From contig NW_021829875.1 of assembly GCF_006345805.1 (NCBI RefSeq), positions 1 to 35,210 on the forward strand: 35,210 bases of DNA. Reading direction: 5' to 3'. Positions 5,939 to 33,702 of this stretch are shown here, piece after piece. The notes under the pieces were generated by a model. That model was not told the DNA's origin and ran no database searches. It saw only the letters and a list, made by a program, of their open reading frames with translations. Source of the stretch: Octopus sinensis (taxonomy: Eukaryota). The first letter of the stretch is position 1. Every line of letters starts with the position of its first letter. The translations under genes were made by a program, and so were the position numbers.

Positions 5939-5965
5939 ATATATATATATGTGTGTGTGTGTGTG

Positions 5966-8900: not shown

Positions 8901-9370
8901 AGAACGGTAGGTGACTAGGTGAGAGGTGGGTTTCCTGAAGTTGGTATTGCAGACCATAAGGTCATTTGCATCGCAGAACTCCAGCAGCCTGGTTCCCTCC
9001 TCATTACGAGAGCCAAAACCGTAGCCTCCATGAACGCCATGGAAGCCCCCGACATGCCGACCAACATGTCCATTAAAATCCCCTGCCACGAAGAGAAGGT
9101 CACTGTCATATGTCAACGAGGTAGTCCGCAATAGGGTGTCATAGAATTGGTCTTTTTGTCCTTCCGGTAGCCCTGGTTGAGGGGCATATGCCGAGATGAT
9201 GGTAGCTGAACTATGGTGAATGACTAATCTAATTTTAATTACTCTGTCACTTACTCTGACTACCTCGATTACCTTATCTACCCATTTCTCCGCAAGAAGT
9301 ATACCCACGCCCCCGACCCCGTCAGTGTTCCCTGCCCAAAAATCTTGTACCTGTGTTCCTTGCCTGTGAG
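5966..9370 (-). mobile_element. RTE-clade LINE, 5'-truncated within the APE domain, with full 3'UTR and (GAT)n tail
   Basis: Continuous APE-RT-thumb coding on the minus strand down to the stop near 6468, then a 3'UTR with 60-bp repeats ending in gatgatgat at ~5966. Confidence 0.95.
7047..9308 (-). CDS. RTE ORF: apurinic endonuclease + reverse transcriptase + Cys/His-rich finger (frameshifted at both ends)
   Basis: ISAYAPQ, AGDFNGHVG, N.EG.RLL.FC, NTNFRK, HRLV (APE). K.GKAPGPSGI, NYRGIKLL, QFGF.PGKST, DMEKAFDRV, GVHQGSVL.P.LF, YADDL (RT). The frame shifts at the A-run near 7060; the C-terminus continues as WYGHVARM..GRGRPRKTW (6468-6689). Confidence 0.93.
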   Translation of the reverse strand: MGILLAEKWVDKVIEVVRVSDRVIKIRLVIHHSSATIISAYAPQPGLPEGQKDQFYDTLLRTTSLTYDSDLLFVAGDFNGHVGRHVGGFHGVHGGYGFGSRNEEGTRLLEFCDANDLMVCNTNFRKPTSHLVTYRSGRHTSQINYILARKRERGLLTNAKTFPGEECTPQHRLVVSDFRIRAKWLPRRRPAWRRRVWKLKDPANGQRFRDILLEAFDKIEGDIASFNVEDNWRFLRDNLLTATDQICGWSKVPARPRVTWWWNTVVDRAIRQKRQAWKDWKNGGSRELYQTARREARRQVYLARGEADKKKFANVLSREDERLEVFHVARQCVRENRDVVGEKCVRTDDGSLALNEDAKREVWRCHYERLLNKENEWDKESLPNVNPTEGPAIRVENSLVVKAIRSMKTGKAPGPSGITAEMLKISGSVGYNLVTRIVNQVIHEGVIPNDWCGSILVNCYKGKGDALDTNNYRGIKLLDQVMKVTERVIAQLIRERVSLDEMQFGFVPGKSTSDAIFLVRQLQEKYLAKDKPLYLAFVDMEKAFDRVPRSLIWWSMRKLGIDEWLVRAVQAMYRDAVSKVRVGNMYTEEFKVEVGVHQGSVLNPLLFIIVLQAITEEFKTGCPWELLYADDLALIAESLSELEEKFQVWKEGLESRGLRVNLAKTKVVISWKVDNPQMSSGRWPCSICRKGVGRNSIRCTQCKLWTHKRCSNVKGRLTGKIVFVCGRCSGALTSENLQKTTSVTFQGKKTISC

Positions 9371-9399
9371 TGTGTTACTTGTATATGTATATATAATAT

Positions 9400-9960
9400 A
9401 CCTTCAGCAAATCCTTCAGTGAGGTGAAAGCTCTCCATCCTGCTCTTAACCTTCGCAACATCTCATTCTCCATCTTTCACCTCTAGTCACTTCTTGACCG
9501 AGATAGACATAGCTGTCCACCTCTTCTATTTCATCGCTTCCGACTGCTAGATGACCGATTGATACGCCTTCAGACCCTATGTACTTGGTTTTCATACAGT
9601 TGATCTTCAAGCCGAGTGCCGAACCTCTCGAATCCAGTTCGTCCAGCAATGGTCTACAGGTGATCGGCGATCTCCACTGTCAGCGTTATGTTGTAACGCT
9701 GATGTTGGGAATCTGGCTAAGAGATCACACATGGAATGAGGAAATCTGGAATAGATCTGAAGTGAAGGACATCATCGCCGAAAACCACTAAGTAAATCTA
9801 CAATGGGCTGGTCATGTCGCAAGGTTCACAGAACATCGGTGGACCTGTGCAGTTGTATGGTGGTACCCGTGCAAACGGAAGTGACCACTCAGGAAGACCT
9901 CCAGTCAGATGTGAAGATGATTTAATAAAAATGTTTAGAACAGAAAAAATAGGAGAGCAG
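9400..9960. mobile_element. Older RTE fragment with inverted 5' part (minus ~9400-9690, plus ~9690-9960)
   Basis: Minus: LDELDSRGSALGLKINCMKTKY...EEVDSYVYLGQEV. Plus: MLGIWLRDHTWNEEI...QWAGHVAR...RW...GRPP.R.EDD. Confidence 0.8.
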
Positions 9961-10059
9961 GAGAGGAAGGGAGCAAATTTTATGGGTAGCGGAGCCAAAT
10001 CGGTACCAGACAGCCTGGCCGATATATATATATATACACTCACGAGTAACATCACCACC

Positions 10060-10720
10060 ACACCACTATCAGAACACCCCTGCACACTGTTCAGCTCACT
10101 GCCCAAACCACACACCATCATGCACACAACAGCTCCTACACACATGCACTGACGTATATACATGTGCACACACCATTCAAACAAACATATTAACTGCTAC
10201 ACACAACCGTTTGCATACACACACACAAGCACAAGCTATATGCAGCTTCACACACATACAAATACACGAAACACTATTCTACACAATGCCCACATTAGGA
10301 TACTTCTACATATATGCACACATGCGCTCCCTTACGTACATGCAGACCCACATAATTTTAAGCTCCCCCAAACATACATTCACACGCACTCGTCCCCTTT
10401 TACACACGCACATCCACACACACTTCTTAAATGCACACTCGCCCTTACGCAACCTAGTTCAGCAGGGGCAGCGTTATTTGCCCCCTTTATCTCAAACTCT
10501 TTCTTCCAGGAATTTCATCATGTTCAACCGTTCATTCCAACACATTTTCTCTCTCTCCTTTATTTTCGTTCCCTCTCCATTTTCACCCTCAATCCTTTCT
10601 GTCGAAGAGCGTAGGTTCTAAACATCAAAGACTTCCCCATTTTTTCCCGAGCGTCAAACTAATACACCTTCTTGTTGTGCCCTCACCTGTCTTCGTCTTT
10701 TGTTTTCTGTAAATTTGTGT
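10060..10720 (+). mobile_element. Non-autonomous Penelope-derived element (CA-rich body plus terminal repeat with hammerhead-like relic)
   Basis: Reverse complement of 30495-30880 (gaacacccctgc..a.tgttca.ctca; tgttgtgcc.tcacctgtcttcgtcttttgttttctgta). The partner copy carries PLE coding remnants. Confidence 0.6.
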
Positions 10721-10829
10721 GTGTGTGTGTACGTGTGCGTGTGTGTGTGTTTGCTTAAGATTGGAATTTAGAACTTTTTCTTGTGAAGAGTATCTACTAG
10801 TAATCTTTAACTAAGATCTTAATACATAA

Positions 10830-10901
10830 GCATTACGAAAGATGTTTGATGAATACATTTGTGTACACTACACGCCGAGACAAAGGCCGGGTGGCTGCTA
10901 G
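10830..10901 (+). mobile_element. Possible Helitron 3' terminus
   Basis: GC-rich cgccgagacaaaggccgggtggctg followed by CTAG|T. The hairpin is weak. Confidence 0.35.
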
Positions 10902-11200
10902 TATATATTATACACACACATACATGCATACATACGCATAGCAGACTTAATAACATAGGCTAAAAGAAAAATAACAGAGGGAGGAAGCGGAGGCATTGAA
11001 ATAAACACTGGGTTTACAATTTGAAGTTCGGAAGTGTGGAAGTTGTAAAGATAATTTATGGACAGGTCAGAAAGAAAGCTAAAACAGCAAAAGGAGTGGG
11101 AGGGAGTTACTGTTACAGACACTAAATACATGAAACTTGACTTTATCACTTTTACACACACACACACATATTTAATTTATAGACACACATTAATTTATAG

Positions 11201-11395
11201 GGTACTACCTAAGAAGAGTGGTCCCGGTGCGCGCAATCGCGTACTAGCGCATCCGAGCTAGCTAGTCGATCTTTACTTTGTGTTTTTGTGTTTCATTTAC
11301 TTTGCTAGGTAGTCGTTGTAGGATCGACTAGTCACGACTAGCTAGCGCGGATGCGCGAGTACGCGAGTGCGAGCACCAGGACCACTCTTCTTAAT
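11201..11395. mobile_element. MITE family 1 (palindromic), right TIR truncated
   Basis: ggtactacctaagaagagtggtcccggtgcg...ggaccactcttcttaa, the same family as 28503-28700. Confidence 0.85.
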
Positions 11396-11763
11396 TAAAT
11401 GGTATCCAGTTTCCACAGCGGAGAAATCCACCCTTGTTAAAACATATACACAAAACCCTACCATTTCAGGCTGACTTAATAGAGACCCTACTCTGTGTTA
11501 CCTCCATCTCTGTTCCCGCCAGAAAGTTCCCTTGTAAGTTTCGTAACGAAAAACAAAATCATTAATTTCCTAATTGGATCACGCACATTTACGATAATTA
11601 ATATCGTATCATTAATTTATAGACACACAGACAGAGTTTAAGATGAAAGGATGTTCACTGAAGCGTTAAATGGCCCCAAATGAAATTAAAATGCCTCACC
11701 TCAGTTTAGTTTTGAACGGTAGCAACGTACCCGGGGTCCCAATTAATTTCAAATTTTCTGTTG

Positions 11764-11805
11764 CCGGAAGTAGATTAAAGGTCGGATAGGAGATGGCAAG
11801 TAAGT
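11764..11805 (+). promoter_or_regulatory. Candidate promoter/first exon: ETS motif, ATG GCA A and splice donor
   Basis: ccggaagt at 11764-11771 and ATGGCAA|gtaagt (ATG at 11793, perfect donor at 11800). Short motifs only. Confidence 0.35.
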
Positions 11806-12050
11806 GGAGATAACTCTCGAAATTTTATTTTGATCTAAAATACTTTTCTTTTATTTCAAAGTTTCTAATATTTACATTCTTTGTTTAGAAAGCATCTTTC
11901 CCAATGTAATTCCTCCCCCCTCTCTCTCTCCTTCTCTCTCTTCCCTCTTTCTCTGAGGACTTCACACTCTATAAGGATTCTCTCATATACATACATACAC
12001 ACACGCATACACATATATCTCCCACATAAATATATGTATAATTCTATGTC

Positions 12051-12095
<45 letters not shown>

Positions 12096-12133
12096 CGCTA
12101 TTCTATCTCTCTCTCCTTTATATATATATATAT

Positions 12134-12261
12134 CCTGGCGCAGCGCAACCACCACAGGTGCCAAGACAGCTGAGGAGAGACGGATTCAGTCAGCAGAACA
12201 GAAACGCCAGGTGCGGAAAGCCAGAGCACCTGCACCAAGCCAGAGCACATCCCCTAACCAC

Positions 12262-12262
<1 letters not shown>
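12134..12262 (+). mobile_element. RTE LINE C-terminal fragment
   Basis: WRSATTTGAKTAEERRIQSAEQKRQVRKARA resembles the C-terminal helix of RTE ORFs. Confidence 0.65.
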
Positions 12263-13188
<926 letters not shown>

Positions 13189-13260
13189 TTCCCTACCAAG
13201 AGCATTTATTTGAAATTCAGTATATTGTATTCTCATTGAATATATTTCATTAACCATACA

Positions 13261-13298
<38 letters not shown>

Positions 13299-13301
13299 TA
13301 C

Positions 13302-13379
<78 letters not shown>

Positions 13380-13517
13380 TTATTTGAGACAAAACCACTA
13401 TTTTGCAAAACAAACAAGGAAAGACTTAATCAATACATAAAATTTAATAAATAGTCAAAAAAACCGCCACTACAATATATATAAGGAACTTATATATATA
13501 TATATATATATATATGT

Positions 13518-13673
13518 AAGCGCAGGAGTGGCTGTGTGGTAAGTAGCTTGCTAACCAACCACTGGTTCAGTCCCACTGCGTGGCACCTTGGGCAAGTGTC
13601 TTCTGCTATAGCCCTGGGCCGACCAATGCCTTGTGAGTGGATTTGGTAGACGGAAACTGAAAGAAGCCTGTCG

Positions 13674-13725
<52 letters not shown>

Positions 13726-13907
13726 TGTGTGTCTGTGTTTGTTCCCCTAGCATTGCTTGACAACCGTTGCTGGTGTGTTTACGTCCCCGTCACTTAGCGG
13801 TTCGGCAAAAGGGACCGATAGAATAAGTACTGGGCTTACAAAGAATAAGTCCCGGGGTCGATTTGCTCGACTAAAGGCGGTGTAAAGAGAGTAAAAGAGA
13901 AAGAGAG
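13518..13907 (+). mobile_element. SINE family A (tRNA-like head, CORE-like ccttgggcaag, internal microsatellite)
   Basis: gcgcaggagtggctgtgtggtaagtagcttgc...gttcagtccc...ggcaccttgggcaagtgtctt...gtaaaagag. Confidence 0.9.
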
Positions 13908-13926
13908 TATATACATATACATATAT

Positions 13927-14111
13927 ATTTCTTTATTGCCCACAAAGGGCCAAACATAGAGGGGACAGACACCAGTGCGTAACTGGTACTTTATTTACCG
14001 ACCCCAAAAGGCTGAAAGGCAAAGTCGACCTCGGCGGAATTTGAACTCACAACGTAACGACAGACGAAATACGGCTACGCATTTCGCCCAGACTGCTAAC
14101 GTTTCTGCCAT
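13927..14111 (-). mobile_element. SINE family B
   Basis: Reverse complement of ggcagaaacgttagc...gagttcaaattccgccgaggtcgactttgcctttca, with an internal deletion. Confidence 0.9.
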
Positions 14112-14120
14112 GCGTGTATA

Positions 14121-14156
<36 letters not shown>

Positions 14157-14234
14157 ATCTATATATACATAATACACAAGTATGTCTGTGTGTGAATTGT
14201 GTTGTCTGTGTGTGTGTGTGTGTGTGTGTGTATG

Positions 14235-14760
14235 ATCATGTTGCTACAATGCATAGACGTTGGCCAATAAAACCGCAACGCGCCTTTAACAACAAAATGT
14301 GTTCGGCTTTTATTGCTCACGAAATCCAAAACGATTTCAATGGGTTAATAATATACAATCAACATGCGTAGGTGTTGCCCACCCTTTCTCTCTTCCTATC
14401 TCTCTCTCTCTCTCTGTCACACCCATACATATACACATAGCTCTTTGGACAATTAAGGTAAAACTAGGTCACAGCTGTAATTTCAGAAATTCCTCTGAGT
14501 GAAGGAGTGACAGAATATTGAGAGATAAGAATGAAAGGCAACCAACAAAGAGAAAATACAATGAGTCGCTTTATTGGCTGCCCTGAATGACCTCCTGCTT
14601 AACATTAAATATATTCTTAAGAACTGAATACAATTTATTCATCCGCGCGACCCAGAGCCAGAATGAAATGGCTTTTGGGAGTCCTACACCTGGAATATTC
14701 TGTCTTTCTGCAAGGTACAGATTTTTCTTGTCTTATATCTTGTCATAAGATAGAGTTTAC
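14235..14760 (+). other. Non-TE-looking segment paralogous (direct) to ~27780-28480; possible promoter/5'UTR exon
   Basis: Shared blocks cgttggcca[a/t]taaaac, gatttcaatgggtt, taggtcaca, gaaggagtg[a/g]cagaatattgagaga and tgaatacaatttattcat, with a GT donor-like site at a homologous position (~14714 / ~28430). Confidence 0.75.
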
Positions 14761-14914
14761 GTATCTGTGTATGGATAGGTGGATAGATGCATGTTTATAT
14801 ATTATTGTTATGTTACAATACAACATAGAGATTCGTTACCCAGACATAAACAGACAAATTGATGAAATCACGAACGTAGATTCAGTTGTATATACACTGA
14901 CATCCATGCTTTTA

Positions 14915-15470
14915 AATGTCTCTCTGCCTGCCTCTCTGCCTACCTATCTATATCTGTCTCTATCTATTCATATATCTGCCTCTCTCTCTGTCTCTCTCTC
15001 TCTCTATTTACATACTATTTCTCTCTCTATCGTTCTCTCTATCTTTCTCTCTCTCTCTCTCTCTATCTACCTCGTTATCTTTCTATCTGTCTTTCTCTTT
15101 CTTTATCTATCTCCCTCTCTATCTATCTATCTCCCTATCTCTCTCTATCTATTTATCTCCTCTCTCTCTCTATCTATCTATCTATCTCCTCTCTCTCTAG
15201 CTATCTATCTCCCTCTCTCTCTCTCTATCTATTTATCTCCTCTCTCTCTATCTATTTATCTCCTCTCTCTCCATCTATCTATCTCCTCTCTCTCTCTCTA
15301 GCTATCTATCTCCCTCTCTCTCTCTCTATCTATTTATCTCCCTCTCTCTCTAGCTAGCTATCTCCTCTCTCTCTAGCTATCTATCTCTCTCTCTCTCTAT
15401 CCATTTCCCCCTCTCTCTATCTATCTCCCTCTCTCTCTTTCTATCTCCCTCTCTGTCTATCTATCTCCCT
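14915..15470. repeat. Compound (CT)n/(CTAT)n microsatellite
   Basis: Direct inspection. Confidence 0.95.
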
Positions 15471-15486
15471 CGCTACGGAAAATGGG

Positions 15487-16014
15487 ATTTTTTGTAGCGG
15501 TGTCAAATGAAATTGTCACCCATGGTTATGACCCTAGTATCGATCTATTGCATTTCAATCTATTTTAGGGTTAGGTTTAGAGTTATGGTTAGGGTTAGGG
15601 TTGGAGGAAGGAGAAGGGTATCTTTTTTTCTTCACAAATGTAAATAAACCCAATCTGTTTCTTAAACGAGGGACATATTCATACAGCACGGAATGTTAAA
15701 ATTGCTGAAATGCTCGAAATTAAAGTCGAAATATCTTACAACATATAGAATTTTCTCAATAGTAGAAGACACTTGCCCAAGGTGCCACGCAGTGGGACTG
15801 AACCCGGAACCATGTGGTTGGTAAGCAAGCTACTTACCACACAGCCACTCCTGCGCCTATTTATTTACATTTCTGAACAAAAAAGATACCCTTCCACCCA
15901 CCCCTAACCCTAAAACAGATTGAAATGCAATAGATTGATACTAGGGTCATAATTATGGGTGACAATTTCATATGACACCGCTACAAAAAACTGCCGTTCA
16001 AACCGAAAAGATCC
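15487..16014. mobile_element. MITE family 2 with long TIRs containing TTAGGG-like runs; SINE A head nested at 15759-15858 (-)
   Basis: tttttgtagcggtgtcaaatgaaattgtcaccca..tgaccctagtatc..ttagggttagg is mirrored by cctaaccctaa..gatactagggtca..tgggtgacaatttcatatgacaccgctacaaaaaa. Confidence 0.9.
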
Positions 16015-16015
16015 A

Positions 16016-16218
16016 AAAAATTATTTATTTTGTGTTTTATTTACTTTGCTAGGAAGTCGTTGTAGGATCGACTAGTCACGACTAGCTAGCACGGACACAA
16101 AATAAATAATTTTTTAAAGCAAAGTAAATAAAACTCAAAAACACAAAGAAAAGATCGACTAGTCATGACTAGCTAATGCGAGTGCGCGCACCGGGACCAC
16201 TGTTCTCAAGTAGTACCC
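16016..16218. mobile_element. MITE family 1, internally rearranged
   Basis: The central block is in forward orientation, then aaaaattatttattttgtgt is mirrored as acacaaaataaataattttt, then comes the reverse-complemented left half ending ggaccactgttctcaagtagtacc. Confidence 0.8.
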
Positions 16219-16829
16219 CATGGTTTTTATGAAATGAACTATTTTGACTTTCTTCTTTTTTTTGTGTTTGAGGGGAATAAAAAAATCTTTTTAGTCAATT
16301 GATATTTTATTTAGGTTTTTAGTCGCACGACACACTTTAGAATTCTTAATCAATTATACAAACCTTCTTGATAAGCCATTCTGTATATCTGTATTTTTAT
16401 TTGCATGTATATTTTTTACCTACTGTATTTTTTTTATATATGTATTCTTTTTATATGTTTAAAGGCCAGGGTAGTATTTAGATATGATCAAATGTTTGAT
16501 AAGAGACGGTGTTATGTATAAAGTTGTTGACTCGAATTTCATGTTTCTTCTCTGATCGATGTTTCTTTATCTCTCTCTGTCTCAATTACACTTGAGCACT
16601 TCCTTTTTGCAGCCTTATAAACCCTCTTTATCTCTATAAAAAGCGGCAAAAATTATATATGTGTGTGTGTATATGTGTGTGTGTGTATATGTGTGTGTGT
16701 ATATAATCAGAGGTGAAAGGTTCAAATCTAGTCCCCAGATTCAAGAGGTCGTAACGTAATCCCTTTAGTCAGCTGATAGAAACGATTTATCTAAATTAAG
16801 AGAGGACATCATCTGTGACATTGCCAATT

Positions 16830-18650
16830 TGTTATCTCTCTGGCAGTCATACAAAATGTACCAGTCAAATACTGGGGTAAAAATCAATCCATTAACACCA
16901 GTCCAATATAATCAGCATATTACGTTCATTTCTCCAAGTTTGTATGTGTCAGACGACTCCTCCCACAGTCGTTGTGGTTGTTGTTGGTCAGGTTTAATCG
17001 CTTGTTTTCTTCACTTGAATTCCAGGCACTTCTTTATCCAAATTTCTTTTACCATATCCCTTCTAAATCTATACTATATTGTGCACTATCACAGATTCTT
17101 CTGAGACCCAGTTTTCCCTAACCCCAGGTTTTCAACACATTAACATTACATTTCTAGTGAAATATGCTCACCTCATTTCTTACCAGTTTTCATGCATCCT
17201 CTACATTAAATGCATCATTGCACTTTACAAATACACATCATGCAATCTCTCCTTCGTTTGGAGACAGAATCCCTTAGTTGTCAGTAGACATAACAGTTCC
17301 CTGTACATTTTCCATCACATTTTTCCTCTAAGCACTGCACTTTGAGAATAGACCTCCACCCACCCACTTCTAATTATGTCTCCTAGGTTAGAGAAACTAT
17401 AGGTCTTTCATACTTGTTCTTACTACAAACTAATCCCGTGTATCTGCTACTTAAAAAGTCCTTCCCCAACCCTAACCCGTCCTCCCTGTAAACTTGCCTG
17501 TGATACCACTGCACCTATTGTGTTGTTTAGATAAACCATATAGAATTCCTATTAACCCCTTTTCTCTCCCCTGCATATAAATTGTGATAACTTTCCAGAT
17601 GATGTAGATGTTGAGGATGCAGGGATTCTTTCAGGACCCAAGTGTTGTGTAGGTGTACGGTGTAGATGTTCTGTTATTGCTTACAAACTAAAACTTTTCT
17701 CATTGCTTTGTTTACTCTTGGGCCTCTCCTGTAGGAGATTCTTTTGAAATTGTGGCCTTCAGCCAGTGAAGTAATTCCTTTTTAGGAATCAGTATTCCAA
17801 AACTAACTTTTGAGCTGGTATCTTCTATAATATGTAATATGTACCTAACAGTGTTATATTTTTACTTTGTGCCGTTGAAGTCATTCCCCACTTTCGAGAT
17901 ATTTCTGAATTTTGATAATCTTTAATTATTTACTAATGATAGGAGGGACCACATCACAGATGACTATTTCACTCTTTGAATATGGGATGTTATCAAAACG
18001 ACTGAAATTGAGTTCTCTGAAGGTCTCTTGGAGTAACGCATCCAGCTTCGGAATTTGGTGTGTCTCCAGGCCAAACGACTGCTTCTCTGCATTGAGAGGT
18101 CACAGCTGCTTCAATACTACCGGCATGTGATTAAAATGTCCCAGAAAAGAATCAAAAGAGGGATTCATCGAGCTGAGACAACTGACAAGAGACCTAGGGT
18201 TAAACCAAGAAAAATGTTTTGCATAAAACCCATTGTTTCAATCGGTTGTGCTTGGAAATCCTCTCAGAATGTCTAATCAAGGTTACTTTAGATAGGATCG
18301 TATAAAGGAGGTGCCTGAGGACTCTACCCCTATAACCTTCCTATGAAGAGAAGGCAAAGCATTTGAATGGATAGAGATGAAATGGTGTAACTATTGTTGG
18401 TTGTCTTTGTTGATTCTTGAGCTTTTCGTATACTGCTGCCCACACAAACACTTCTCCTGCCAGTTTTACCAGAAGATTTCTCATGTGTTACTTTCAATTT
18501 TATTCGATTTTAAAATGTTTTTCTCAATTCCAGCTTTTATTTCAACTTGTTTGTTATTTTTCTCAAAATCTTTAGAAACAGATAACAATGACTTCTAATT
18601 TCCGTGTTTCTTCAGTATTTCTTATTCGTCTATTCACGTAATTTCTTTGT
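16830..18650 (-). mobile_element. Heavily decayed Helitron RepHel N-terminal/Rep region
   Basis: Across frameshifts and in the expected order: PFKCFAFSS*EG (YNSAFAFTSxG), RFDNIPYSKSEIV (RYNxPxxxEVA), SSRY...KYERPIVSLT (SPRYM..YGKPDLFITF), RELLCLLTTKGF, YRFRRD (YxYRRR), LYDCQ (KYDCHINVE). Confidence 0.6.
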
Positions 18651-18835
18651 CAAATCTATAATTTACAGTTCACAGGTTTTATATTATCGTTAATGCTTTT
18701 TCAATTATTTCCTGTTGCATCTTTTGCAGGAAGGGAATTAGAAATTACACAAGATGACCTGGAAATCATCAAGATTGACCATTCGTACAGCGTTATGGAA
18801 CAAGGCTCTCAGATGCTGCTCAAATGGTTTCAAAG

Positions 18836-19136
18836 TTGGAATCCCTGAGATTGATCCTGCAAAAGAACACAAGCAACCCCAGCAGCAATAATAAGATCTT
18901 GGAAGCAGATGATAACGTAGCCTGTGTCATTCAATGGTCTTGTTAGCATCTAAATTCTTCAATAACCTAATGCAGCCTCTTGTCTTTTGTGTGAGAATAT
19001 GTCCATGGAAATCGTGATGGTAGGAGTTGTTGATGAATTTGATAGGTACAGAGCTTCAATATCAACTGTATCTGAGCTTCTGCATATCTTTACTTCGCCA
19101 AGTATCCTGGTCAATAATGAATTCATTTACAAACTG
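18836..19136 (+). repeat. Direct copy of 21211-21516 (Helitron helicase piece)
   Basis: Identical except for five single-base deletions in this copy. Confidence 0.95.
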
Positions 19137-20446
19137 CTGAAACTTCGATGCAAGCTGTGATTTTAGAATCTGAGTTTCCTCACATTTTGTTGTGAAATCA
19201 TAAGTGGTTGCCACATGTCCATGTAATGCTGGCAGTTTGTTACTGTTATTGTTGTGTTTAGTGGTTCTTTCTTGCCTTTCACAGTTTCCTCATGGAAAAA
19301 GCTTGCTGTGTTGTTAACACAAGTATTATCATTTGTGCATTTGGCTGAGTGATTTTCTTTTAAAGGGTGAAACATTTCTTTCAACAACGTAACTTGCTGG
19401 CATGATTGTGTTTTTTCTGTCAAACTTGAGAATGTAAGCATTTCTTATTCCAATATTTTAATTTAGTCTCTTTGTGTAGCCTATCGAAAGATCTTCTCTG
19501 GCCTGTCTATAGAATTGGTGTAAGTCTTGGGTCAGGTCGAAAGTCCTCTCCTTTGCCTCCTCTCGTTGACTCAAATAAGCCCTGGAGATGTGGCTGTTAT
19601 TTCTAGCAGGTTAAAATGTTTGGGAATGCTGTTGATGACACAACAATGAAAGTGTGTTAATGTGTTACTATTGCTTAATTCTGTTAGGAAGGGAGCAGGG
19701 GAAAACTGAAATTAAAAGAAAAATCAGAATCGTAATTTAATCTTGCTGCAGAAAATATAAGAATTTGAGAAAGAATTTCTTGGAAAATTACTTTGGATTT
19801 GAGGATGATATTGTCTCTAAAAATAAGGAATGGACACATTTGTTATCCTCAGTGGCAGAAGGGAAGATGAAAATAGTTAAATAAATAGATTGCTTATTAT
19901 TAGTATTGTAGTAATATAGTATTGTAGATTGCTTATTATTCGGATATTAGTATTGTAGTATCTACGAGGTGGCGATCTGTCAGAAGGGTTAGAAAGTCAG
20001 ACTAAACGCTTAGCGGCACTTGTCCGTCTATACGTTCTGAGTTCAAATTCCGCCGAGGGGTCAATAAATTAAGTACCAGTTTGCACTGGTGTCGATTTGT
20101 AATCGACTTCATCCGTTTGTTGTCTTGTTTGTCCCCTTGTGTATAGCCTCTTGTGGGTAGTAAAGAAATAGGTATTTCGTCTGCTGCTACTTTCTGAGTT
20201 TAAACTCCACCGAGGTCAACTTTGCCTTTTATCCTTCCGGGGTTGATAAATTAAGTACCTGTTGCGTACTGAAGTCGATCTAATCGATTGGCCCCACTCC
20301 CCAAAATTTCGGGACTTGCACCTAGACTAGAAAAGATTATCAGTAGTGTAGTGATTGAATTCAAATAATGCCGAAGTCAACTTAGTCTTTGATTCTTTCA
20401 GGGTCAATAAAGTAGGTACCAGTGTGTACTGGGGCGGAGGTAATTG
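19134..20446 (-). repeat. Inverted copy of 22099-23422 (Helitron-like piece, AT-rich spacer and SINE B cluster)
   Basis: ctgctgaaacttcgatgcaagc...ggggcggaggtaattg is the reverse complement of caattacctccgcccc...gcttgcatcgaagtttcagcag. Differences are mostly small indels. Confidence 0.95.
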
Positions 20447-20944
20447 GTTTCAAAGTTGCGATCCAGCGAAACGTACATTAAAAGAAGCTCTTTTAGAAAC
20501 CGAATGTTTCACGGCGCTTCAATGTTTATTATCAGACTTCAGTTGAATTTCGTGTAAATATTGCTGTTGTTTAACCCCAAGTCTACCTTCACCACACACA
20601 TACCTATGATTAAATGCCTTCCATCCAGGACCATCATGTTTTCCTTGTCTAATGTGTCATTCTTTAAGATGATAAGTGATGAATAGAGTAGGATCCGGCT
20701 ACTAATTCTAGCAGATATATTTACCACATGGAGATCCCTTTATTTGTTTAGCTCCCTTTTTGTTGGAGATTAACTTTGGAAATAAAGATTGAAATTTCAT
20801 TTGTTGTTGGCGTTGTTGTTGTAAGCCCCGGCATGTCCCTAAATACGTCCATTGTTATATAAACAGTTTAAATATCCTGTGGGATGTTCCCAAAAATGAA
20901 GAGTGTAATTCCATTTAGTGAAACATACTTAAAATGCATATTTG

Positions 20945-21775
20945 TTTTCAAGTAGAACCTCCTTGTTGACAGAATTGTCAGTAAATATACAGTTTCTATT
21001 TCTCACAGCCAATAGTTTTACATTAGGCTTCATCCAAACTCTAGAAAGTGAAACTTACAGCTGACCAGGGAGAAGAATTGTGTTGGAAGATATATTCCAA
21101 TTTGTTTAAATGCCTGTCTCTGTGCCTTGTTGCATGTCAAGGGAAAGAGTGGTTCCACAGGAAATTGTTTGTATGGTAACTATGAATGGGAACTCCATTC
21201 CTTGACCCATTTGGAATCCCTGAGATTGATCCTGCAAAAGAACCACAAGCAACCCCAGCAGCAATAATAAGATCTTGGAAGCAGATGATAACGTAGCCTG
21301 TGTCATTGCAATGGTCTTGTTTAGCATCTAAATTCTTCAATAACCTAATGCAGCCTCTTGTCTTTTGTGTGAGAATATGTCCATGGAAATCGTGATGGTA
21401 GGAGTTTGTTGATGAATTTGATTAGGTACAGAGCTTCAATATCAACTGTATCTGAGCTTCTGCATATCTTTACTTCGCCAAGTATCCTGGTCAATAATGA
21501 ATTCATTTACAAACTGTGATATTTCATTTGTTGGAGTAATAATGGGTCTGTTTGCAAGCCACATGGGGCTGTGAAATTATTTGCAAGACAACATCACATA
21601 AACTTGACAGGCCAAAGTTGTAAAGCAGGTTGATTTTGGATGCACCTAGACTTTGTTCGACAGAAGTATCACCATTTCCTGCATCAAAATGGTGATTAAC
21701 AAACTCTTTTTCATCAGAATGACCTTTTGCAAGAAGTCTTAGATTAGTTCTATCTTCATTATTTCTACTCAATCC
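20945..21775 (-). mobile_element. Decayed Helitron PIF1-like helicase C-terminus
   Basis: EKEFVNHHFDAGNG, ITPTNE...VNEFII, RSSDTVD, KNLDAKQDHCNDT (RNLD..GLCNGT), KQFPVEPLFPLTCNKAQRQAFKQIGIYLP..FFS..GQL*VSLSRV (motifs V/VI), TDNSVNKEVL. Confidence 0.85.
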
Positions 21776-21782
21776 TCAAGAA

Positions 21783-22019
21783 ATTATTTCTTTACTGCCT
21801 ACAAAGGGCTAAACATAGAGGGGACAAACAAAGACAGGTCAAGGTATTAAGTCGATTACATCGACCCCAGTGCGTAACTGGTACTTAATTTATCGACCCC
21901 GAAAGGATGAAAGGCAAAGGTGACATCGGCGGTATTTGAACTCAGAACGTAACGTCAGACGACATACCGCTAAGTGTTTGGCCTGGCGTGCTAACGATTC
22001 TGCCAGCTCGCCGCCCTTG
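21783..22019 (-). mobile_element. SINE family B
   Basis: Ends gctaacgattctgccagctcgccgcc and has the full body. Confidence 0.9.
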
Positions 22020-22098
22020 AGTGATAATATTATTAACAGAATTATCATTATAATGCTTTCAATGCACAGGGCCAGAAAGTTCGTGGGAGGGGGTAAGA

Positions 22099-22580
22099 CA
22101 ATTACCTCCGCCCCAGTACACACTGGTACCTACTTTATTGACCCTGAAAGAATCAAAGACTAAGTTGACTTCGGCATTATTTGAATTCAATCACTACACT
22201 ACTGATAATCTTTTCTAGTCTAGGTGCAAGTCCCGAAATTTGGGGGAGTGGGGCCAATCGATTAGATCGACTTCAGTACGCAACAGGTACTTAATTTATC
22301 AACCCCGGAAGGTAAAAGGCAAAGTTGACCTCGGTGGATTTTAAACTCAGAAAGTAGCAGCAGACGAAATACCTATTTCTTTACTACCCACAAGAGGCTA
22401 TACACAGAGGGGACAAACAAGGACAGACAAACGGATGAAGTCGATTACATCGACACCAGTGCAAACTGGTACTTAATTTATTGACCCCTCGGCGGAATTT
22501 GAACTCAGAACGTATAGACGGACAAAGTGCCGCTAAGCGTTTAGTCTGACGTTCTAACCCTTCTGACAGATCGCCACCTC
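22099..22580 (-). mobile_element. Tandem SINE family B cluster (mirror at 19966-20446)
   Basis: Repeated gtacttaattta and gaactcaga motifs, with head ttctgacagatcgccacc. Confidence 0.85.
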
Positions 22581-22859
22581 GTAGATACTACAATACTAAT
22601 ATCCGAATAATAAGCAATCTACAATACTAATAATTACTACAATACTAATAATAAGCAATCTATTTATTTAACTATTTTCATCTTCCCTTCTGCCACTGAG
22701 GATAACAAATGTGTCCATTCCTTATTTTTAGAGACAATATCATCCTCAAATCCAAAGTAATTTTCCAAGAAATTCTTTCTCAAATTCTTATATTTTCTGC
22801 AGCAAGATTAAATTACGATTCTGATTTTTCTTTTAATTTCAGTTTTCCCCTGCTCCCTT

Positions 22860-23422
22860 CCTAACAGAATTAAGCAATAGTAACACATTAACACACTTTC
22901 ATTGTTGTGTCATCAACAGCATTCCCAAACATTTTAACCTGCTAGAAATAACAGCCACATCTCCAGGGCTTATTTGAGTCAACGAGAGGAGGCAAAGGAG
23001 AGGACTTTCGACCTGACCCAAGACTTACACCAATTCTATAGACAGGCCAGAGAAGATCTTTCGATAGGCTACACAAAGAGACTAAATTAAAATATTGGAA
23101 TAAGAAATGCTTAACATTCTCAAGTTTGACAGAAAAAACACAATCATGCCAGCAAGTTACGTTTGTTGAAAAGAAATGTTTCACCCTTTAAAAGAAAATC
23201 ACTCAGCCAAAATGCACAAATGATAATACTTGTGTTAACAACACAGCAAGCTTTTTCCATGAGGAAACTGTGAAAGGCAAGAAAGAAGACAAGACAACAC
23301 AACAATAACAGTAACAAACTGCCAGCATTACATGGACATGTGGCAACCACTTATGATTCACAAACAAAAATGAGTGAGGAACTCAGATTCTAAAATCACA
23401 GCTTGCATCGAAGTTTCAGCAG
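22860..23422 (+). mobile_element. Possible Helitron Rep-helicase linker remnant (orientation opposite to the other Helitron pieces)
   Basis: ISRAYLSQREE / GEDF...TGQRRSFDRL loosely resembles IGRxYxVSPxEGERFYLRLLL..GxTSFxDL, and TITVTNCQ...MWQ resembles IL..CxP..LW. The match is weak. Confidence 0.4.
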
Positions 23423-23589
23423 AACTTCACATTTTACATACGTAAAGCAAAGCATGAAAGAACAAACCCAACAAGGGTTGAGGAAAACGACTACTGACAA
23501 CATGTGGCATTCTTTCGATATGAGTCCCATTTATATCACGTGTAATTGTTTACATTTAAGAAGACGTCAATTCCGTAAAATTTTAATTT

Positions 23590-23668
23590 TTTTTATATAT
23601 GTGGGGTTAGGGTTAGGGGTGGGGGAAGGGTATCCTTTTTCTTCAGAAATGTAAATAAACCCAAGTGA
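23590..23668. mobile_element. MITE family 2 fragment
   Basis: ggggttagggttaggggtgggggaagggtatcctttttcttcagaaatgtaaataaaccca, as at ~15590-15650. Confidence 0.7.
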
Positions 23669-23894
23669 CAGTTATGTTACTAGTACCGAATGATCGCCCA
23701 ACATGTTATCTGCGATCAACGAAATGCTGAGAGAACCACTAGGATACATACGTTACATTAAATACATATATACATTTATACATACGTGCACATAGATACA
23801 CGCACATATACATATATATACATCCATACACACAAGCAAATTGATACATACACAGGTATACAAATATACATAAACATATATACATATGTACATA

Positions 23895-24024
23895 CGTAGT
23901 GGCCGTATGGTAAGTAGCCTGCTTACCAACCACATGGTTCTGGGTTCAGTCCCACTGCGTGGCACCTTGGGTAAGAGTCTTCTACTAAAGCCTCGGACCA
24001 ACCAAAGCCTTGAGAGTGGAATGT
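23895..24024 (+). mobile_element. SINE family A, 5' part
   Basis: gtggccgtatggtaagtagcctgcttaccaaccacatggttctgggttcagtcccactgcgtggcaccttggg. Confidence 0.9.
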
Positions 24025-24131
24025 ATATATTATATGTATATATATATATATAATATATATATACCTAACCTTTATTACCCTTAAGGACCACAAAGCTGAA
24101 TTTCTCTCTCTCTCTCTCTTCTCTCTCTATA

Positions 24132-24168
<37 letters not shown>

Positions 24169-24746
24169 GACATGTATATATGTGTTTATATGTATATATA
24201 CGTATACGCACAAAGACAGTCGTACATCACCCACAAGCACATGCGCACACACACTCCTAAAGTATTATATACACGCATGCACAGTCACACATAGCGGCAC
24301 ATAGAAATTGAAACAGTGTGCACCGGCGCCACCGACAGCAATAACAACATGAAGCCTTTTGACCTAATTCACACTAACTTTGTCAACAAAATACAAACCC
24401 CAAATTAATGGGAATTTAATGATATAATTTCAAACTAATTAACGACAGAAAATATTTATGAAAGATTAATGTATAGCAAGTTAATAGCGACAAACAGACA
24501 GACAAAGACGTGTGTGTGTGTGGGGGGATATGCAGAGCCTTAGAATGTTCGATAAGTTACCTTGTGCTAATCCTTCCAACTCTCTGATTTCTCAGTTCAA
24601 ATCCCATCAACATCTTCTTCCTTCGTTTCAGGGTTTCAAGATCCAGTTCTGGGGTTGATGCTTCCTTTTCTCCAACTTTATCTTTCCGTTGGCCCCTTTC
24701 TCTCATTCAGGAAGAAATGAGATGATGCCTGACATGGAAGAGGATG

Positions 24747-24866
<120 letters not shown>

Positions 24867-26005: not shown

Positions 26006-27062
26006 ATATCAACAATTGGGGGTAAAAATAATTAATTAATCAATTTCACCAAGTGTTCAGTATGTAAAAGGACCATTTAAGGCGAATTCAAAATATTACA
26101 TTATATAATTAGGGCTTAGTAAAATAAATTACTTGCCACATACTGAACTAAGTAGAAATAGCAGCCAAAAAAATTTTCTTAGCATTTCTACTACTTAAAG
26201 AAAAATTTCTCTCAGATAATGTTTACTCTAGACAGCTCACGAAGGTTTGGGGGTAAATACAGAAAAATATCACAAGTACATAGATCGTTTGAGTACGTCA
26301 ACGTTTCAAGATTAGCCAAATAAAATCAGCATTTCTATCGTCAGCTCAAAATTTCTTAATTTGGATTTGGAAACACTAAAAAGAAGGAACTTTACCTATC
26401 AGCGAACTACTCGCTTCAGATGAACCACTCCAACTAACAGTGTCAACAAATTCAAAATGCGCAGGCGTAAAATTCTGCACTCCCCATTCCACGCACGTGG
26501 TCTATCTAGCAAACATTATATTTTAACCGCGAGAACCGAGGTAGTATGACCGAGAGAAATGAATTATAATATCAACAATTGAGGGTAAAATTAATTAATT
26601 AATCAATTTCACCAAGTGTTAAGTATGTTCTCGCGGTTAAAATATAATGTTTGCTAGATAGACCACGTGGGTGGAATGGGGAGTGCAGAATTTTACGCCC
26701 TGCGCATTTTGAATTGTTGACACTGTTAGTTGGAGTGGTTCATCTGAAGCGAGTAGTTCGCTGATAGGTAAAGTTCCTTCTTTTTAGTGTTTCCAAATCC
26801 AAATTAAGAAATTTTGAGCTGACGATAGAAATGCTGATTTTATTTGGCTAATCTTGAAACGTTGACGTACTCAAACGATCTATGTACTTGTGATATTTTT
26901 CTGTATTTACCCCCAAACCTTCGTGAGCTGTCTAGAGTAAACATTATCTGAGAGAAATTTTTCTTTAAGTAGTAGAAATGCTAAGAAAATTTTTTTTGGC
27001 TGCTATTTCTACTTAGTTCAGTATGTGGCAAAGTAATTTATTTTACTAAGCCCTAATTATAT
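26006..27062. mobile_element. Penelope-related element with inverted duplication and partial direct terminal repeat
   Basis: ~26101-26535 is the reverse complement of 26628-27062, and ~26006-26065 is repeated at ~26569-26627. It shares motifs with the 12.3-13.2 kb unit (ctatttcta..gtatgtggc; catac[t/c]gaa..tac..gg; attt[t]tacc). CTGACGA...GAAAC occurs at 26819-26860. Confidence 0.7.
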
Positions 27063-27781: not shown

Positions 27782-28480
27782 GTTACTACATTGGCGTTGG
27801 CCATTAAAACAGACAACACACATTTAACAATAAACGGTGAAATGCTTTTATTACTCACAAGATACAAAGAGATTTCAATGGGTTTAATCGACATACGTGG
27901 GCCTCTCTCTTTCTCTCTCATAGTTTTTCAAACAACTATGAAAAATTTAGGTCACACCAAATGAACTGAATTAGACTTTGAGCGGGTAAATAGTACAAAC
28001 ACCATTCAGCTTAAAATCGATAAACACATATGAGAAATTCACGTAAATGAAGGAGTGGCAGAATATTGAGAGAGAGAATAATGAAAGGAGATACAAAGAA
28101 TAAACAGATAAAGAAGAAGAAAAAAAGCAATGACTGCCATAACGTATCTCCTGCTAAAGTTACACTATATTTAATTATGTAATTGAATACAATTTATTCA
28201 TTCTCGCGAACCAGAACAGACTGGAACGGATTATTAAAGACTGGAACGGATTATTAAAGACTGGAACGGATTATTAAAGACGGGAACGGATTATTAAAGA
28301 CTGGAACGGATTATTAAAGACTGGAACGGATTATTAAAGACTTGAACGGATTATTAAAGACTGGAACGGATTATTAAAGACGGGAACGGATTATTAAAGA
28401 CTTCCACTGCTGAAAATATTTTGCCTTGCGGTAAAGTAAAGATTTTTCGACTCTTATAAGTTAAGATAGAATTAATTTAT
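27780..28480 (+). other. Segment paralogous to 14235-14760, upstream of the ankyrin gene
   Basis: See shared blocks listed for 14235-14760. Confidence 0.75.
28218..28402 (+). repeat. 20-bp minisatellite (ctggaacggattattaaaga) x9
   Basis: Units start every 20 nt from 28221 to 28381. Variants differ only at positions 2-3 (ctg/cgg/ctt). Confidence 0.97.
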
Positions 28481-29207: not shown

Positions 29208-29556
29208 TAGGCGGCGAGCTGACAGAAACGTTAGCACGCTGGGCGAAATGCTTAGCGGCATTTCGTTCGCCGTTACGTTCTGAGTTCAAATTCCGCCGAG
29301 GTCGACTTTGCCTTTCATCTTTTCGGGTTCGATTAATTAAGTACCAGTTACACACTGGGGTCGATGTAATCGACTTAATCCCTTGGTCTGTCTTTGTTTG
29401 TCCCCTCTGTGGGTAATAAAGAAATAGGTATTTCGTCTGCCGGTACATTCTGAATTCAAATCCGCCGAGGTCGACTTTGCCTTTCATCCTTTCACCCGTT
29501 TCTCTGTCCTTGTTTGTCCCCTCTATGTTTAGCCCCTTGTGGGTAATAAACAAATA
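29208..29556 (+). mobile_element. SINE family B with duplicated 3' part
   Basis: ggcggcgagctgacagaaacgttagcacgctgggcgaaatgc...gagttcaaattccgccgaggtcgactttgcc (the latter motif occurs twice). Confidence 0.92.
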
Positions 29557-33550: not shown

Positions 33551-33702
33551 ATTAACCTAAGAGATTCAAACGGTAAAACTTATCTGATGGCTGCTTCTGC
33601 AGAGGGCAACATAGTTTTAATAAACTTGTTAATAGATGCTGGAGCAGATTTGGACAAGAGAGACACAAGGGGTCGGACAGCTTTTTATCATGCTGTGTTT
33701 GG
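33551..33702 (+). CDS. Ankyrin-repeat protein, ankyrin exon
   Basis: Acceptor cttcacttcag|, then INLRDSNGKTYLMAASAEGNIVLINLLIDAGADLDKRDTRGRTAFYHAVFG, then donor GG|gtaagt. Canonical G.T.L..A..G....V..LI..GAD...D..G.TA pattern. Confidence 0.9.

What the first reader, a model, noticed from the sequence alone, without database searches (positions are those of the whole stretch)
18730..20546. Death-domain exon split by a chained, locally templated insertion with microhomologies and a 14-bp duplication
Removing 18839-20458 rejoins two halves into one in-frame death-domain exon (...QMLLK-WFQS-CDPAKRTLKEALL...*). TGGTTTCAAAGTTG is present on both sides (18825-18838 and 20445-20458). The insert is not a transposon. 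It is a direct copy of 21211-21516 followed by an inverted copy of 22099-23422, with overlaps TTG, CTG and TG at the three junctions. This fits serial template switching (MMBIR/FoSTeS or Pol-theta-type templated insertion; established mechanisms, assignment inferred) that inactivates a death-fold gene. The copies differ from their templates mainly by 1-bp indels, so a long-read chimera or poorly polished haplotype is a real alternative.
Basis: partly seen in the sequence, partly recalled or inferred. Interest (0 to 1): 0.8.

Follow-up and report, generated by a model that had tools for sequence, protein, structure and literature searches.

The report
Locally templated insertion splitting octopus death-domain exon
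In this octopus assembly, the last exon of a death-domain gene relic is split by a 1.6 kb patchwork copied from DNA 0.7–3 kb downstream; this is a known kind of copying error, the Octopus vulgaris reference lacks it, and raw reads must still show it is real.

Summary
TGGTTTCAAAGTTG flanks a 1.6 kb insert. The insert is a direct copy of 21211-21516 joined to an inverted copy of 22099-23422, with 3, 3 and 2 bp junction microhomologies.

New evidence:
- **Empty site.** The window is an Octopus vulgaris-complex genome. The collinear reference locus (OX597842.1) and a paralog 200 kb away both have the exon uninterrupted.
- **Exon identity.** It is the terminal exon of an ankyrin-RING-death-domain family and encodes death-domain helices 2-6. 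No upstream family exon lies within 18.7 kb, so "gene inactivation" is overstated.
- **Age.** The insert shares all 12 substitutions that separate this lineage's templates from the reference, so it is very young.
- **Quality.** Its 22 private changes are 19 one-base deletions, two other small changes and one substitution. That is four times the flank indel rate and looks like consensus error from low read support.
- **Extra lesion.** A 9 bp deletion flanked by ACA lies 16 bp right of the insert.

Best reading: a real chained template-switch insertion of the MMBIR/FoSTeS type (about 0.6). Main rival: a chimeric molecule or read artefact (about 0.3). It is a new example of a known kind, of modest interest.

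The parts
18730..18838 (+). 5' part of the terminal death-domain exon, after the acceptor AG at 18728-18729. It encodes GRELEITQDDLEIIKIDHSYSVMEQGSQMLLKWFQS.
   Evidence: Reading frame. The encoded peptide matches O. vulgaris P0001 residues 28-64 exactly, and the DNA is identical to the exon in L001.
18825..18838 (.). Left copy of the 14-bp duplication TGGTTTCAAAGTTG. Its last three bases, TTG, are the J1 microhomology with the bases at the start of template X.
18839..19136 (+). X', a direct copy of template X (21211-21516, counting the shared TTG). It has five private 1-bp deletions and no substitution. The last three bases, CTG (19134-19136), are the J2 microhomology.
19134..20446 (-). Y', an inverted copy of template Y (22099-23422). 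Private changes: 14 one-base deletions, one +TT, one complex patch (19259-19264) and one substitution (19995). The last two bases, TG, are the J3 microhomology.
20445..20458 (.). Right copy of the 14-bp duplication
   Evidence: The single copy at the empty site in L001 is shown.
20459..20546 (+). 3' part of the exon, CDPAKRT(-3 aa)LKEALLETECFTALQCLLSDFS, with the stop at 20544-20546. At about 20475 it lacks 9 bp (ACACCTCAA, flanked by ACA) that every relative has.
21211..21516 (+). Template X, 665 bp downstream of the stop codon. It is present at the same place in the O. vulgaris reference and in the paralog.
22099..23422 (+). Template Y, which contains SINE-like modules. With Y' it now forms a 1.3-kb inverted repeat around a 1652-bp spacer (20447-22098).
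   Evidence: (I1, I4)
9039..9122 (+). Sequence identical to coding exon 1 of the O. vulgaris gene model P0001. That model splices this exon to the death-domain exon. It lies antisense to the LINE reverse-transcriptase ORF at 7050-9374(-).

Best explanation
A very young insertion allele in an Octopus vulgaris-complex genome, made in vivo by chained, microhomology-primed copying of nearby DNA (the MMBIR/FoSTeS kind of event).

**Proposed path (inferred from the junctions)**
1. A growing 3' end left the exon after ...AAAGTTG (18838).
2. It re-primed on TTG 2.4 kb ahead and copied 306 nt (X).
3. It switched at CTG to the opposite strand at 23422 and copied 1324 nt back to 22099 (Y, inverted).
4. 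It returned at TG to a point 14 nt behind where it had left. That re-copies 12-14 nt and makes the duplication.
5. It possibly slipped once more, about 30 nt later, skipping 9 nt at an ACA repeat.

**Equally possible variant.** A break with 14-nt complementary 3' overhangs, whose two ends each primed on the same downstream strand and were then joined at CTG.

**Consequence.** The frame now ends ...KWFQSWNP*, so the last two helices of the death domain are lost. The exon is an orphan terminal exon of an ankyrin-RING-death-domain family, so little function is likely to have been lost.

**Shown:** the anatomy, the empty site, the local templates, the microhomologies and the youth of the copy. **Inferred:** that it happened in vivo, and the order of the switches.
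For: - **Empty site.** It is present in the collinear O. vulgaris reference locus. L001 15665-20993 matches window 13491-18838, and L001 20977-25399 matches window 20442-24805. Paralog L002 also has the exon uninterrupted.
- **Templates.** Both lie within 3 kb and are intact at their boundaries in both assemblies.
- **Microhomology.** It is present at all three junctions, chance about 4-6e-4, which argues against blunt ligation or in-silico joins.
- **Junction context.** The junctions lie in unique sequence or inside a SINE-like copy, not at long shared repeats, which argues against a repeat-driven misassembly.
- **Origin of the copy.** The insert carries all 12 substitutions and 3 indels that separate this lineage's templates from the reference. 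It was therefore copied from this genome's own templates.
- **Linked deletion.** A 9-bp deletion flanked by ACA sits 16 bp right of the insert and is absent from L001, L002, P0003 and every family protein. Only 4 non-repeat indels longer than 5 bp occur in 26.7 kb, so this proximity has p about 0.01. It sits in a flank whose consensus should reflect most reads.
- **Published signature.** Insertions near their template, microhomology-flanked, sometimes with several templates and switches: PMC8421209.
Against: - **No independent support.** No read-level or second-assembly evidence exists for any junction. The junction-ORF look-up and the metagenome scan found nothing.
- **Poor consensus in the insert.** It has 21 private small indels in about 1608 bp (1.3%) against 0.32% window-specific indels in the flanks (P about 1e-7). 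Its indel:substitution ratio is 21:1 against 15:25 in the flanks (P about 7e-6). It has 22 private changes against 6 in its templates.
- **Errors next to a junction.** One uncorrected deletion lies 30 bp from J1. That is what a path carried by very few reads would look like.
- **Reference lacks it.** The O. vulgaris reference does not have the insertion, and the source assembly's methods are unknown.
Confidence: 0.6

Rival explanations
1. Technical artefact. The insertion exists only in one or a few chimeric molecules or reads, for example polymerase template switching during library preparation or amplification. Alternatively it sits in an assembly path that the bulk of reads do not support, and the animal's genome has the uninterrupted exon.
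For: - The insert's private differences are almost only 1-bp deletions in short runs, at four times the flank rate and with one substitution. This is typical of unpolished long-read consensus.
- An uncorrected deletion lies only 30 bp from J1, where junction-spanning short reads should have fixed it.
- The reference assembly and the paralog lack the insert.
- In-vitro strand-displacing polymerases are known to make local, often inverted, microhomology-joined chimeras (own knowledge: Lasken and Stockwell 2007).
Against: - Three microhomology junctions with an exact return 14 nt behind the departure point is not what ligation or in-silico chimeras give.
- The junctions are not in long repeats.
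- Most long-read assemblers drop paths carried by a single read (own knowledge).
- The nearby 9-bp deletion lies in a flank that all reads should polish, and it is best explained as part of the same event.
- A heterozygous young duplicate is also expected to be badly polished, because short reads map better to the cleaner template copy.
Confidence: 0.3
2. RNA-mediated insertion by a LINE machinery with twin priming. A minus-strand transcript running from 23422 down to 21211 is reverse-transcribed at a staggered nick. This would give a direct 3' segment (X), an inverted 5' segment (Y), an internal 582-nt loss and a 14-bp target-site duplication.
For: - A 14-bp duplication is in the usual range for LINE target-site duplications.
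- The topology fits twin priming if the RNA is minus-strand: inverted 5' part plus direct 3' part, with microhomology at the inversion junction (description of twin priming in PMC2837659).
- LINEs are present nearby: reverse-transcriptase ORF at 7050-9374(-).
Against: - There is no poly(A), microsatellite tail or LINE 3' end at the expected end. The insert starts GGAATCCC right after the duplication.
- The source lies only 0.7-3 kb from the target, which is unexpected for retrotransposition in trans.
- No annotated transcript covers the source region in the O. vulgaris locus.
- The internal loss of 582 nt appears large for twin priming (own knowledge).
Confidence: 0.04
3. Insertion of a mobile element (DNA transposon, Helitron or composite element) that happens to have a second copy downstream.
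For: A flanking direct duplication is present. Y contains SINE-like modules that recur in the window.
Against: - The insert ends (GGAATCCCTGAG... and ...GGCGGAGGTAATTG) are not inverted repeats.
- The insert is two separate pieces of the downstream region in opposite orientations, with 582 bp of the source skipped.
- The right end cuts through the middle of a SINE-like copy.
- No other copies of X or of the unique part of Y exist in the window or in L001-L003 beyond the orthologous or paralogous positions.
Confidence: 0.01

Closest known systems
FoSTeS / MMBIR complex rearrangements and MMBIR-linked templated insertions (Lee et al. 2007 and Hastings et al. 2009, own knowledge; PMC8421209)
   Same: The insertion is copied from nearby sequence. 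It uses more than one template and both orientations. Each junction has 2-3 bp of microhomology. The copying returns to the original locus with a small duplication, and there may be an extra small slip next to the breakpoint.
   Different: The events catalogued from short reads are mostly tens of bp, with templates within 100 bp (PMC8421209). Human disease cases usually involve kb-to-Mb copy-number changes. Here the tracts are 306 and 1324 nt and the templates lie 2.4-4.6 kb away. Dependence on replication or a break is not shown.
Polymerase-theta-mediated end joining and synthesis-dependent MMEJ with templated insertions
   Same: 3' ends prime at microhomology on nearby DNA. Copied tracts, direct or inverted, end up between the two ends. 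A two-ended version fits this geometry: both tracts would be copied from the same strand and then joined at CTG.
   Different: Reported templated tracts are usually short, well under 100 nt (own knowledge). Pol theta makes at least as many substitutions as frameshifts, whereas the insert has 19 one-base deletions and one substitution.
LINE-1 twin-priming insertions (PMC2837659)
   Same: A target-site duplication of about 14 bp. An inverted segment joined to a direct segment from one source. Microhomology at the internal junction.
   Different: There is no poly(A) or LINE tail. The source is adjacent to the target, and the content is non-LINE genomic sequence.
Ankyrin-repeat, RING (zf-C3HC4_3) and C-terminal death-domain proteins of octopus, annotated 'MIB1/MIB2-like' or 'ankyrin-3-like'
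   Same: The split exon is 94% identical to the terminal exon of O. vulgaris P0001 and 72-85% identical to P0003 and P0002. It is homologous (E 1e-15 to 1e-38) to the C-termini of full-length family members whose death domains pass Pfam's cut-off.
   Different: Only the last exon is present at this locus. The helix-1 exon, the RING and the ankyrin repeats are not found within 18.7 kb upstream.

Membership tests
Death domain (Pfam PF00531) | Sequence match to the family profile at or above the curated cut-off | tested here: not met
   The rejoined peptide scores 15.4 bits (E=0.02) against a cut-off of 22.6. P0001, P0002 and P0003 score 18.2, 16.7 and 22.3 bits over profile positions 20-72 of 86. 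The sequence is a partial domain, so a sub-threshold score is expected.
Death domain (Pfam PF00531) | Clear homology to proteins whose death domain passes the cut-off | tested here: met
   A profile of P0001-3 finds 53 proteins (25 at E<=1e-10). Eight of the ten homologs scanned score 39-49 bits on PF00531 at the aligned C-terminus. The best PDB sequence matches are the Fas, ankyrin-1/2/3 and RIPK1 death domains.
Death domain (Pfam PF00531) | Six-helix bundle fold | tested here: met
   AlphaFold2 model of P0003 from a 31-sequence alignment: mean pLDDT 68.7, and 74-84 per 10-residue block over most of the exon-encoded part; six helices. The top 23 Foldseek PDB matches are all death domains (ankyrin-G, FADD, Fas, TNFR1, RAIDD, RIPK1), with TM 0.48-0.60 and probability 0.72-1.0, but E-values of only 0.04-1. 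Confidence in the model is moderate.
Death domain (Pfam PF00531) | A complete domain encoded at the locus (helix 1 onwards) | tested here: not met
   In full-length relatives the preceding exon supplies ...HLHxVxxKLGxKWxxL. No such exon was found in window 1-18700 by tblastn with 53 family proteins at E<=5.
MMBIR/FoSTeS-type templated insertion | The inserted sequence is a copy of nearby genomic sequence | tested here: met
   X' matches 21211-21516 and Y' is the reverse complement of 22099-23422, both 97.5-97.7% identical, with the differences almost all 1-bp indels.
MMBIR/FoSTeS-type templated insertion | Microhomology at every junction | tested here: met
   TTG, CTG and TG. Joint chance is about 4-6e-4.
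MMBIR/FoSTeS-type templated insertion | An ancestral uninterrupted site exists | tested here: met
   L001 (O. vulgaris OX597842.1) and paralog L002 read ...CTCAAATGGTTTCAAAGTTGCGATCC... without a break.
MMBIR/FoSTeS-type templated insertion | The event is present in the organism's DNA (arose in vivo) | not testable with these tools
   No reads and no second assembly of the same animal are available. The exact-ORF look-up and the metagenome scan returned nothing.
LINE twin-priming retrocopy | Target-site duplication of about 7-20 bp | tested here: met
   A 14-bp duplication.
LINE twin-priming retrocopy | Poly(A) or LINE 3' tail at the end of the direct segment | tested here: not met
   The insert begins GGAATCCCTGAG directly after the duplication and ends ...GGTAATTG. 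There is no A or T run and no simple-repeat tail.
DNA transposon | Terminal inverted repeats and a unit copied as a whole | tested here: not met
   The ends are not complementary. The insert is two non-adjacent source pieces in opposite orientation.
Pol-theta templated insertion (TMEJ) | Short templated tracts, typically under 100 nt (own knowledge) | tested here: not met
   The tracts are 306 and 1324 nt.

The most novel reading that the evidence does not exclude
A real germline or haplotype allele recording a four-step template-switch chain: a forward jump of 2.4 kb, a strand switch, a return 14 nt behind the departure point, then a 9-nt slip. It lies inside a tandem array of ankyrin-RING-death-domain genes. 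It also creates a 1.3-kb inverted repeat around half an exon, which could seed further inversions. If such events are common in octopus genomes, they could be one source of the heavy local rearrangement and gene-family turnover seen in cephalopods.
Probability: 0.5. Interest if true: 0.4.

Novelty: new member of a known kind. Interest (0 to 1): 0.3.

Why it matters
**If real.** This is a clean, fully sequence-resolved example of chained microhomology-mediated template switching in a cephalopod. The templates, the empty site and a likely extra slip are all visible. It is useful as a worked case and as a search pattern for similar structural variants in long-read mollusc assemblies. It does not reveal a new mechanism, and the gene it hits is probably already a relic.

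**If an artefact.** It flags a class of local chimeric insertions that can break exons in annotated assemblies. The signature to look for is an excess of private 1-bp deletions with no substitutions relative to a nearby template.

Tried and rejected
- **Transposon.** Rejected: no terminal repeats, a two-piece origin in two orientations, and a right end in the middle of a SINE-like copy.
- **Repeat-driven misassembly.** Rejected as the main cause: the junctions share only 2-3 bp, not long repeats.
- **Deletion in the reference rather than insertion here.** Rejected: the paralog and all family proteins are continuous, and the site carries a duplication.
- **Error-prone repair synthesis as the source of the 1-bp deletions.** Considered and set aside. 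Nineteen deletions against one substitution, at 1.3% per base, in runs of 2-5 bases and in some non-run contexts, fits consensus error better than any polymerase I know of (polymerase fidelities from own knowledge).
- **Independent support for the junctions.** An exact look-up of the junction-spanning ORF and a metagenome scan for the 24-mer shared by the filled and empty alleles both found nothing. These collections probably do not hold octopus reads, so the results are uninformative.
- **tRNA and Rfam scans of the window.** No matches.
- **Pfam on ORFs inside the insert and templates.** No matches.
- **Source species and assembly.** Not determined. Substitution divergence from the O. vulgaris reference is 1.0%. 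The reported within-individual heterozygosity is 1.22%, and the O. sinensis split is dated at 2.5 My (PMC10700109). A conspecific haplotype or a sister species are both possible.
Full report
**1. What is in the sequence**

The window is AT-rich animal DNA (39% G+C). It is full of TG/TA/CT microsatellites and carries a LINE reverse-transcriptase ORF and SINE-like repeats.

At the reported coordinates every sequence statement holds.
- TGGTTTCAAAGTTG is present at 18825-18838 and again at 20445-20458.
- Between the two copies, 18836-19136 is a direct copy of 21211-21516 (X).
- 19134-20446 is the reverse complement of 22099-23422 (Y).
- The three junctions overlap by TTG, CTG and TG. Under blunt joining, overlaps this long at all three junctions have a probability of about 4-6e-4.
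- Joining 18838 to 20459 restores one frame, GRELEITQDDLEIIKIDHSYSVMEQGSQMLLKWFQS|CDPAKRTLKEALLETECFTALQCLLSDFS*, preceded by a splice acceptor at 18728-18729.
- In the interrupted state the frame reads ...KWFQSWNP and stops.

**2. Whose genome, and is there an empty site**

The rejoined peptide finds three Octopus vulgaris proteins, 72-94% identical and all uninterrupted.

The locus encoding the best one is L001 (GCA_951406725.2, OX597842.1:15819567-15850656, reversed). It is collinear with window 1-30535 at 94.7-99.2% identity.
- L001 15665-20993 aligns to window 13491-18838.
- L001 20977-25399 aligns to window 20442-24805.
- The 1.6 kb insert is therefore absent there, and only one copy of the 14-mer is present.
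- Templates X and Y sit at the corresponding downstream positions in L001 (21759-22067 and 22655-23980).

A paralogous locus 200 kb away (L002, about 94% identical) is also uninterrupted. So this is an insertion in the window's lineage, not a deletion elsewhere.

Substitution divergence between the window and L001 is 1.0%. That is close to the 1.22% heterozygosity reported for the reference animal. O. sinensis is said to have split 2.5 My ago (PMC10700109). The window is therefore another O. vulgaris-complex haplotype or a sister species. I could not tell which.

**3. What the exon is**

Alone, the rejoined peptide is below Pfam's Death cut-off (15.4 against 22.6 bits). The three octopus proteins score 16.7-22.3 bits over profile positions 20-72 of 86. 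Family-level evidence is stronger.
- A profile of the three proteins finds 53 proteins in the 1.84-billion-protein library.
- The longer ones have ankyrin repeats, a zf-C3HC4_3 RING and a C-terminal Death domain scoring 39-49 bits.
- The same profile's best PDB matches are the death domains of Fas, ankyrin-1/2/3 and RIPK1.
- A moderate-confidence AlphaFold2 model (mean pLDDT 68.7; 74-84 per 10-residue block over most of the exon-encoded part) is a helical bundle whose top 23 Foldseek PDB matches are all death domains.
- The insertion falls right after the helix containing ...MLLKWFQS, so the last two helices are lost.

The "gene", however, is thin.
- In full-length relatives the preceding exon supplies helix 1 (...KLGxKWxxL).
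- tblastn with all 53 family proteins finds no ankyrin, RING or helix-1 exon in the 18.7 kb upstream.
- The O. vulgaris model (P0001, 95 aa) splices the exon to a first exon at window 9039-9122. That exon lies antisense to the LINE RT ORF at 7050-9374(-).
- Between the two paralogous exons there are 6 non-synonymous and 2 synonymous differences, which looks neutral.
- A new family member starts downstream at 32669-32758, with an ankyrin exon at 33548-33703.

I read the split exon as an orphan terminal exon in a tandem gene array. "Inactivation" of a working gene is not shown.

**4. How young, and how good, is the insert**

I aligned the insert, the window templates and the L001 templates three ways.
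- **Shared with its templates:** the insert shares all 12 substitutions and 3 indels by which the window templates differ from L001. It was copied from this lineage's own templates.
- **Private to the insert:** 19 one-base deletions, one +TT, one messy patch (19259-19264) and a single substitution, in about 1608 bp.
- **Private to the templates:** 6 changes.
- **Flank background:** polarised with paralog L002, the window-specific changes in the flanks are 15 small indels and 25 substitutions in 4706 bp.
- **Comparison:** the insert has four times the flank indel rate (Poisson P about 1e-7). Its indel:substitution ratio is inverted (Fisher P about 7e-6). The 22:6 asymmetry against its templates has P about 0.004.

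The deletions lie in runs of 2-5 bases or outside runs. That is the pattern of residual long-read consensus error, not of evolution or of any repair polymerase I know (own knowledge). So the insert path was built from less, or less polishable, read evidence than its surroundings. One deletion lies only 30 bp from J1.

This fits two situations:
- a heterozygous young duplicate, where short reads map preferentially to the cleaner template copy;
- a path carried by very few reads.

**5. A nearby extra lesion**

Sixteen bases to the right of the duplication the window lacks ACACCTCAA. The deletion is flanked by ACA and removes three residues (TPQ or equivalent) that L001, L002, P0003 and every family protein keep. 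Only four non-microsatellite indels longer than 5 bp separate the window from L001 in 26.7 kb. Such proximity has a chance of about 0.01. The deletion lies in unique flank sequence that all reads should polish. I take it as weak evidence that a low-processivity polymerase continued past the return point and slipped once more, so that the whole lesion is one biological event.

**6. Mechanism**

*Best explanation (about 0.6): serial microhomology-primed template switching in vivo, of the MMBIR/FoSTeS kind.* The steps are:
1. leave the exon at 18838;
2. prime at TTG and copy X forward;
3. switch strands at CTG and copy Y backward;
4. return at TG, 14 nt behind the departure point;
5. possibly skip 9 nt at ACA.

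A two-ended variant fits equally well. A break with 14-nt complementary 3' overhangs would let both 3' ends prime on the same downstream strand, one at 21211 and one at 22099. They would extend in the same direction and be joined at CTG. The published signature of such events is proximity of the template, flanking microhomology and sometimes several templates (PMC8421209).

*Rivals.*
- **Artefact from a chimeric molecule or read (about 0.3).** The consensus-error signature supports it. The three-junction precision, the microhomologies and the linked 9-bp deletion argue against it.
- **LINE twin priming (about 0.04).** The duplication and the topology fit (PMC2837659). There is no tail, and the source is adjacent to the target.
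- **Transposon (about 0.01).**
- **Pol-theta-type insertion.** It is disfavoured by tract length.

**7. Other structural differences**

The window and L001 differ by several other structural variants within 30 kb. A 1.6 kb haplotype-specific insertion is therefore not out of character for this genome.

**8. Verdict**

The anatomy and the kind of mechanism hold, gene inactivation is overstated, and whether the insertion is real remains open.
- It is a new example of a known kind of mutation.
- Interest is modest (0.3). It would rise somewhat if reads confirm the allele, and more if the 1-bp deletions turned out to be real.

Noticed in passing
window ~20475 (between 20474 and 20475): A 9-bp in-frame deletion (ACACCTCAA, flanked by ACA) relative to L001, L002 and all family proteins, 16 bp right of the insertion. 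It may be part of the same event.
   Followed up: partly
window 19134-20446 and 22099-23422: The insertion creates a 1.3-kb inverted repeat around a 1652-bp spacer. The spacer holds the 3' half of the exon and template X. If real, this is a substrate for later inversion or fold-back rearrangement.
   Followed up: no
window 7050-9374 (-) and 9039-9122 (+): A 775-codon open frame with an RVT_1 reverse-transcriptase domain (a LINE). The first coding exon of the O. vulgaris model P0001 lies antisense inside it, so that gene model looks TE-derived.
   Followed up: partly
window 9747-10660 versus L001 10710-12988: The two assemblies hold unrelated sequence here, 914 bp against 2279 bp. The L001 segment has about 84-bp terminal inverted repeats (98% identical), so it looks like a DNA-transposon polymorphism.
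   Followed up: partly
window 4895-5936: About 1 kb of diverged tandem and inverted repeat units (262-nt units, 94% alike) is largely missing at the corresponding position in L001.
   Followed up: partly
window 32669-32758 and 33548-33703 (+): The N-terminal exon and first ankyrin-repeat exon of the next ankyrin-RING-death-domain family member. The locus is a tandem array of this family.
   Followed up: partly
window 28178-28442: A minisatellite of a 20-bp unit (AGACTGGAACGGATTATTAA), about 12 copies, 96-100% alike.
   Followed up: no
window 26167-26456 and 26707-26996: Inverted repeat arms of 290 nt, 99% complementary, 250 nt apart. A matching structure is in L001. It may be a foldback or MITE-like element.
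   Followed up: no
window 19967-20446, 13968-14110, 21785-22015, 29209-29556: A recurrent SINE-like module (…TTCAAATTCCGCCGAGGGGTCAATAAATTAAGTACCAG…), 72-88% alike between copies. ARAGORN and Rfam find no tRNA or known RNA family in it.
   Followed up: partly
window 18015-18057, 18373-18525, 23558-23587: Small clusters of 1-3 bp indels relative to L001 in otherwise unique sequence, which suggests patchy consensus quality in one or both assemblies.
   Followed up: no
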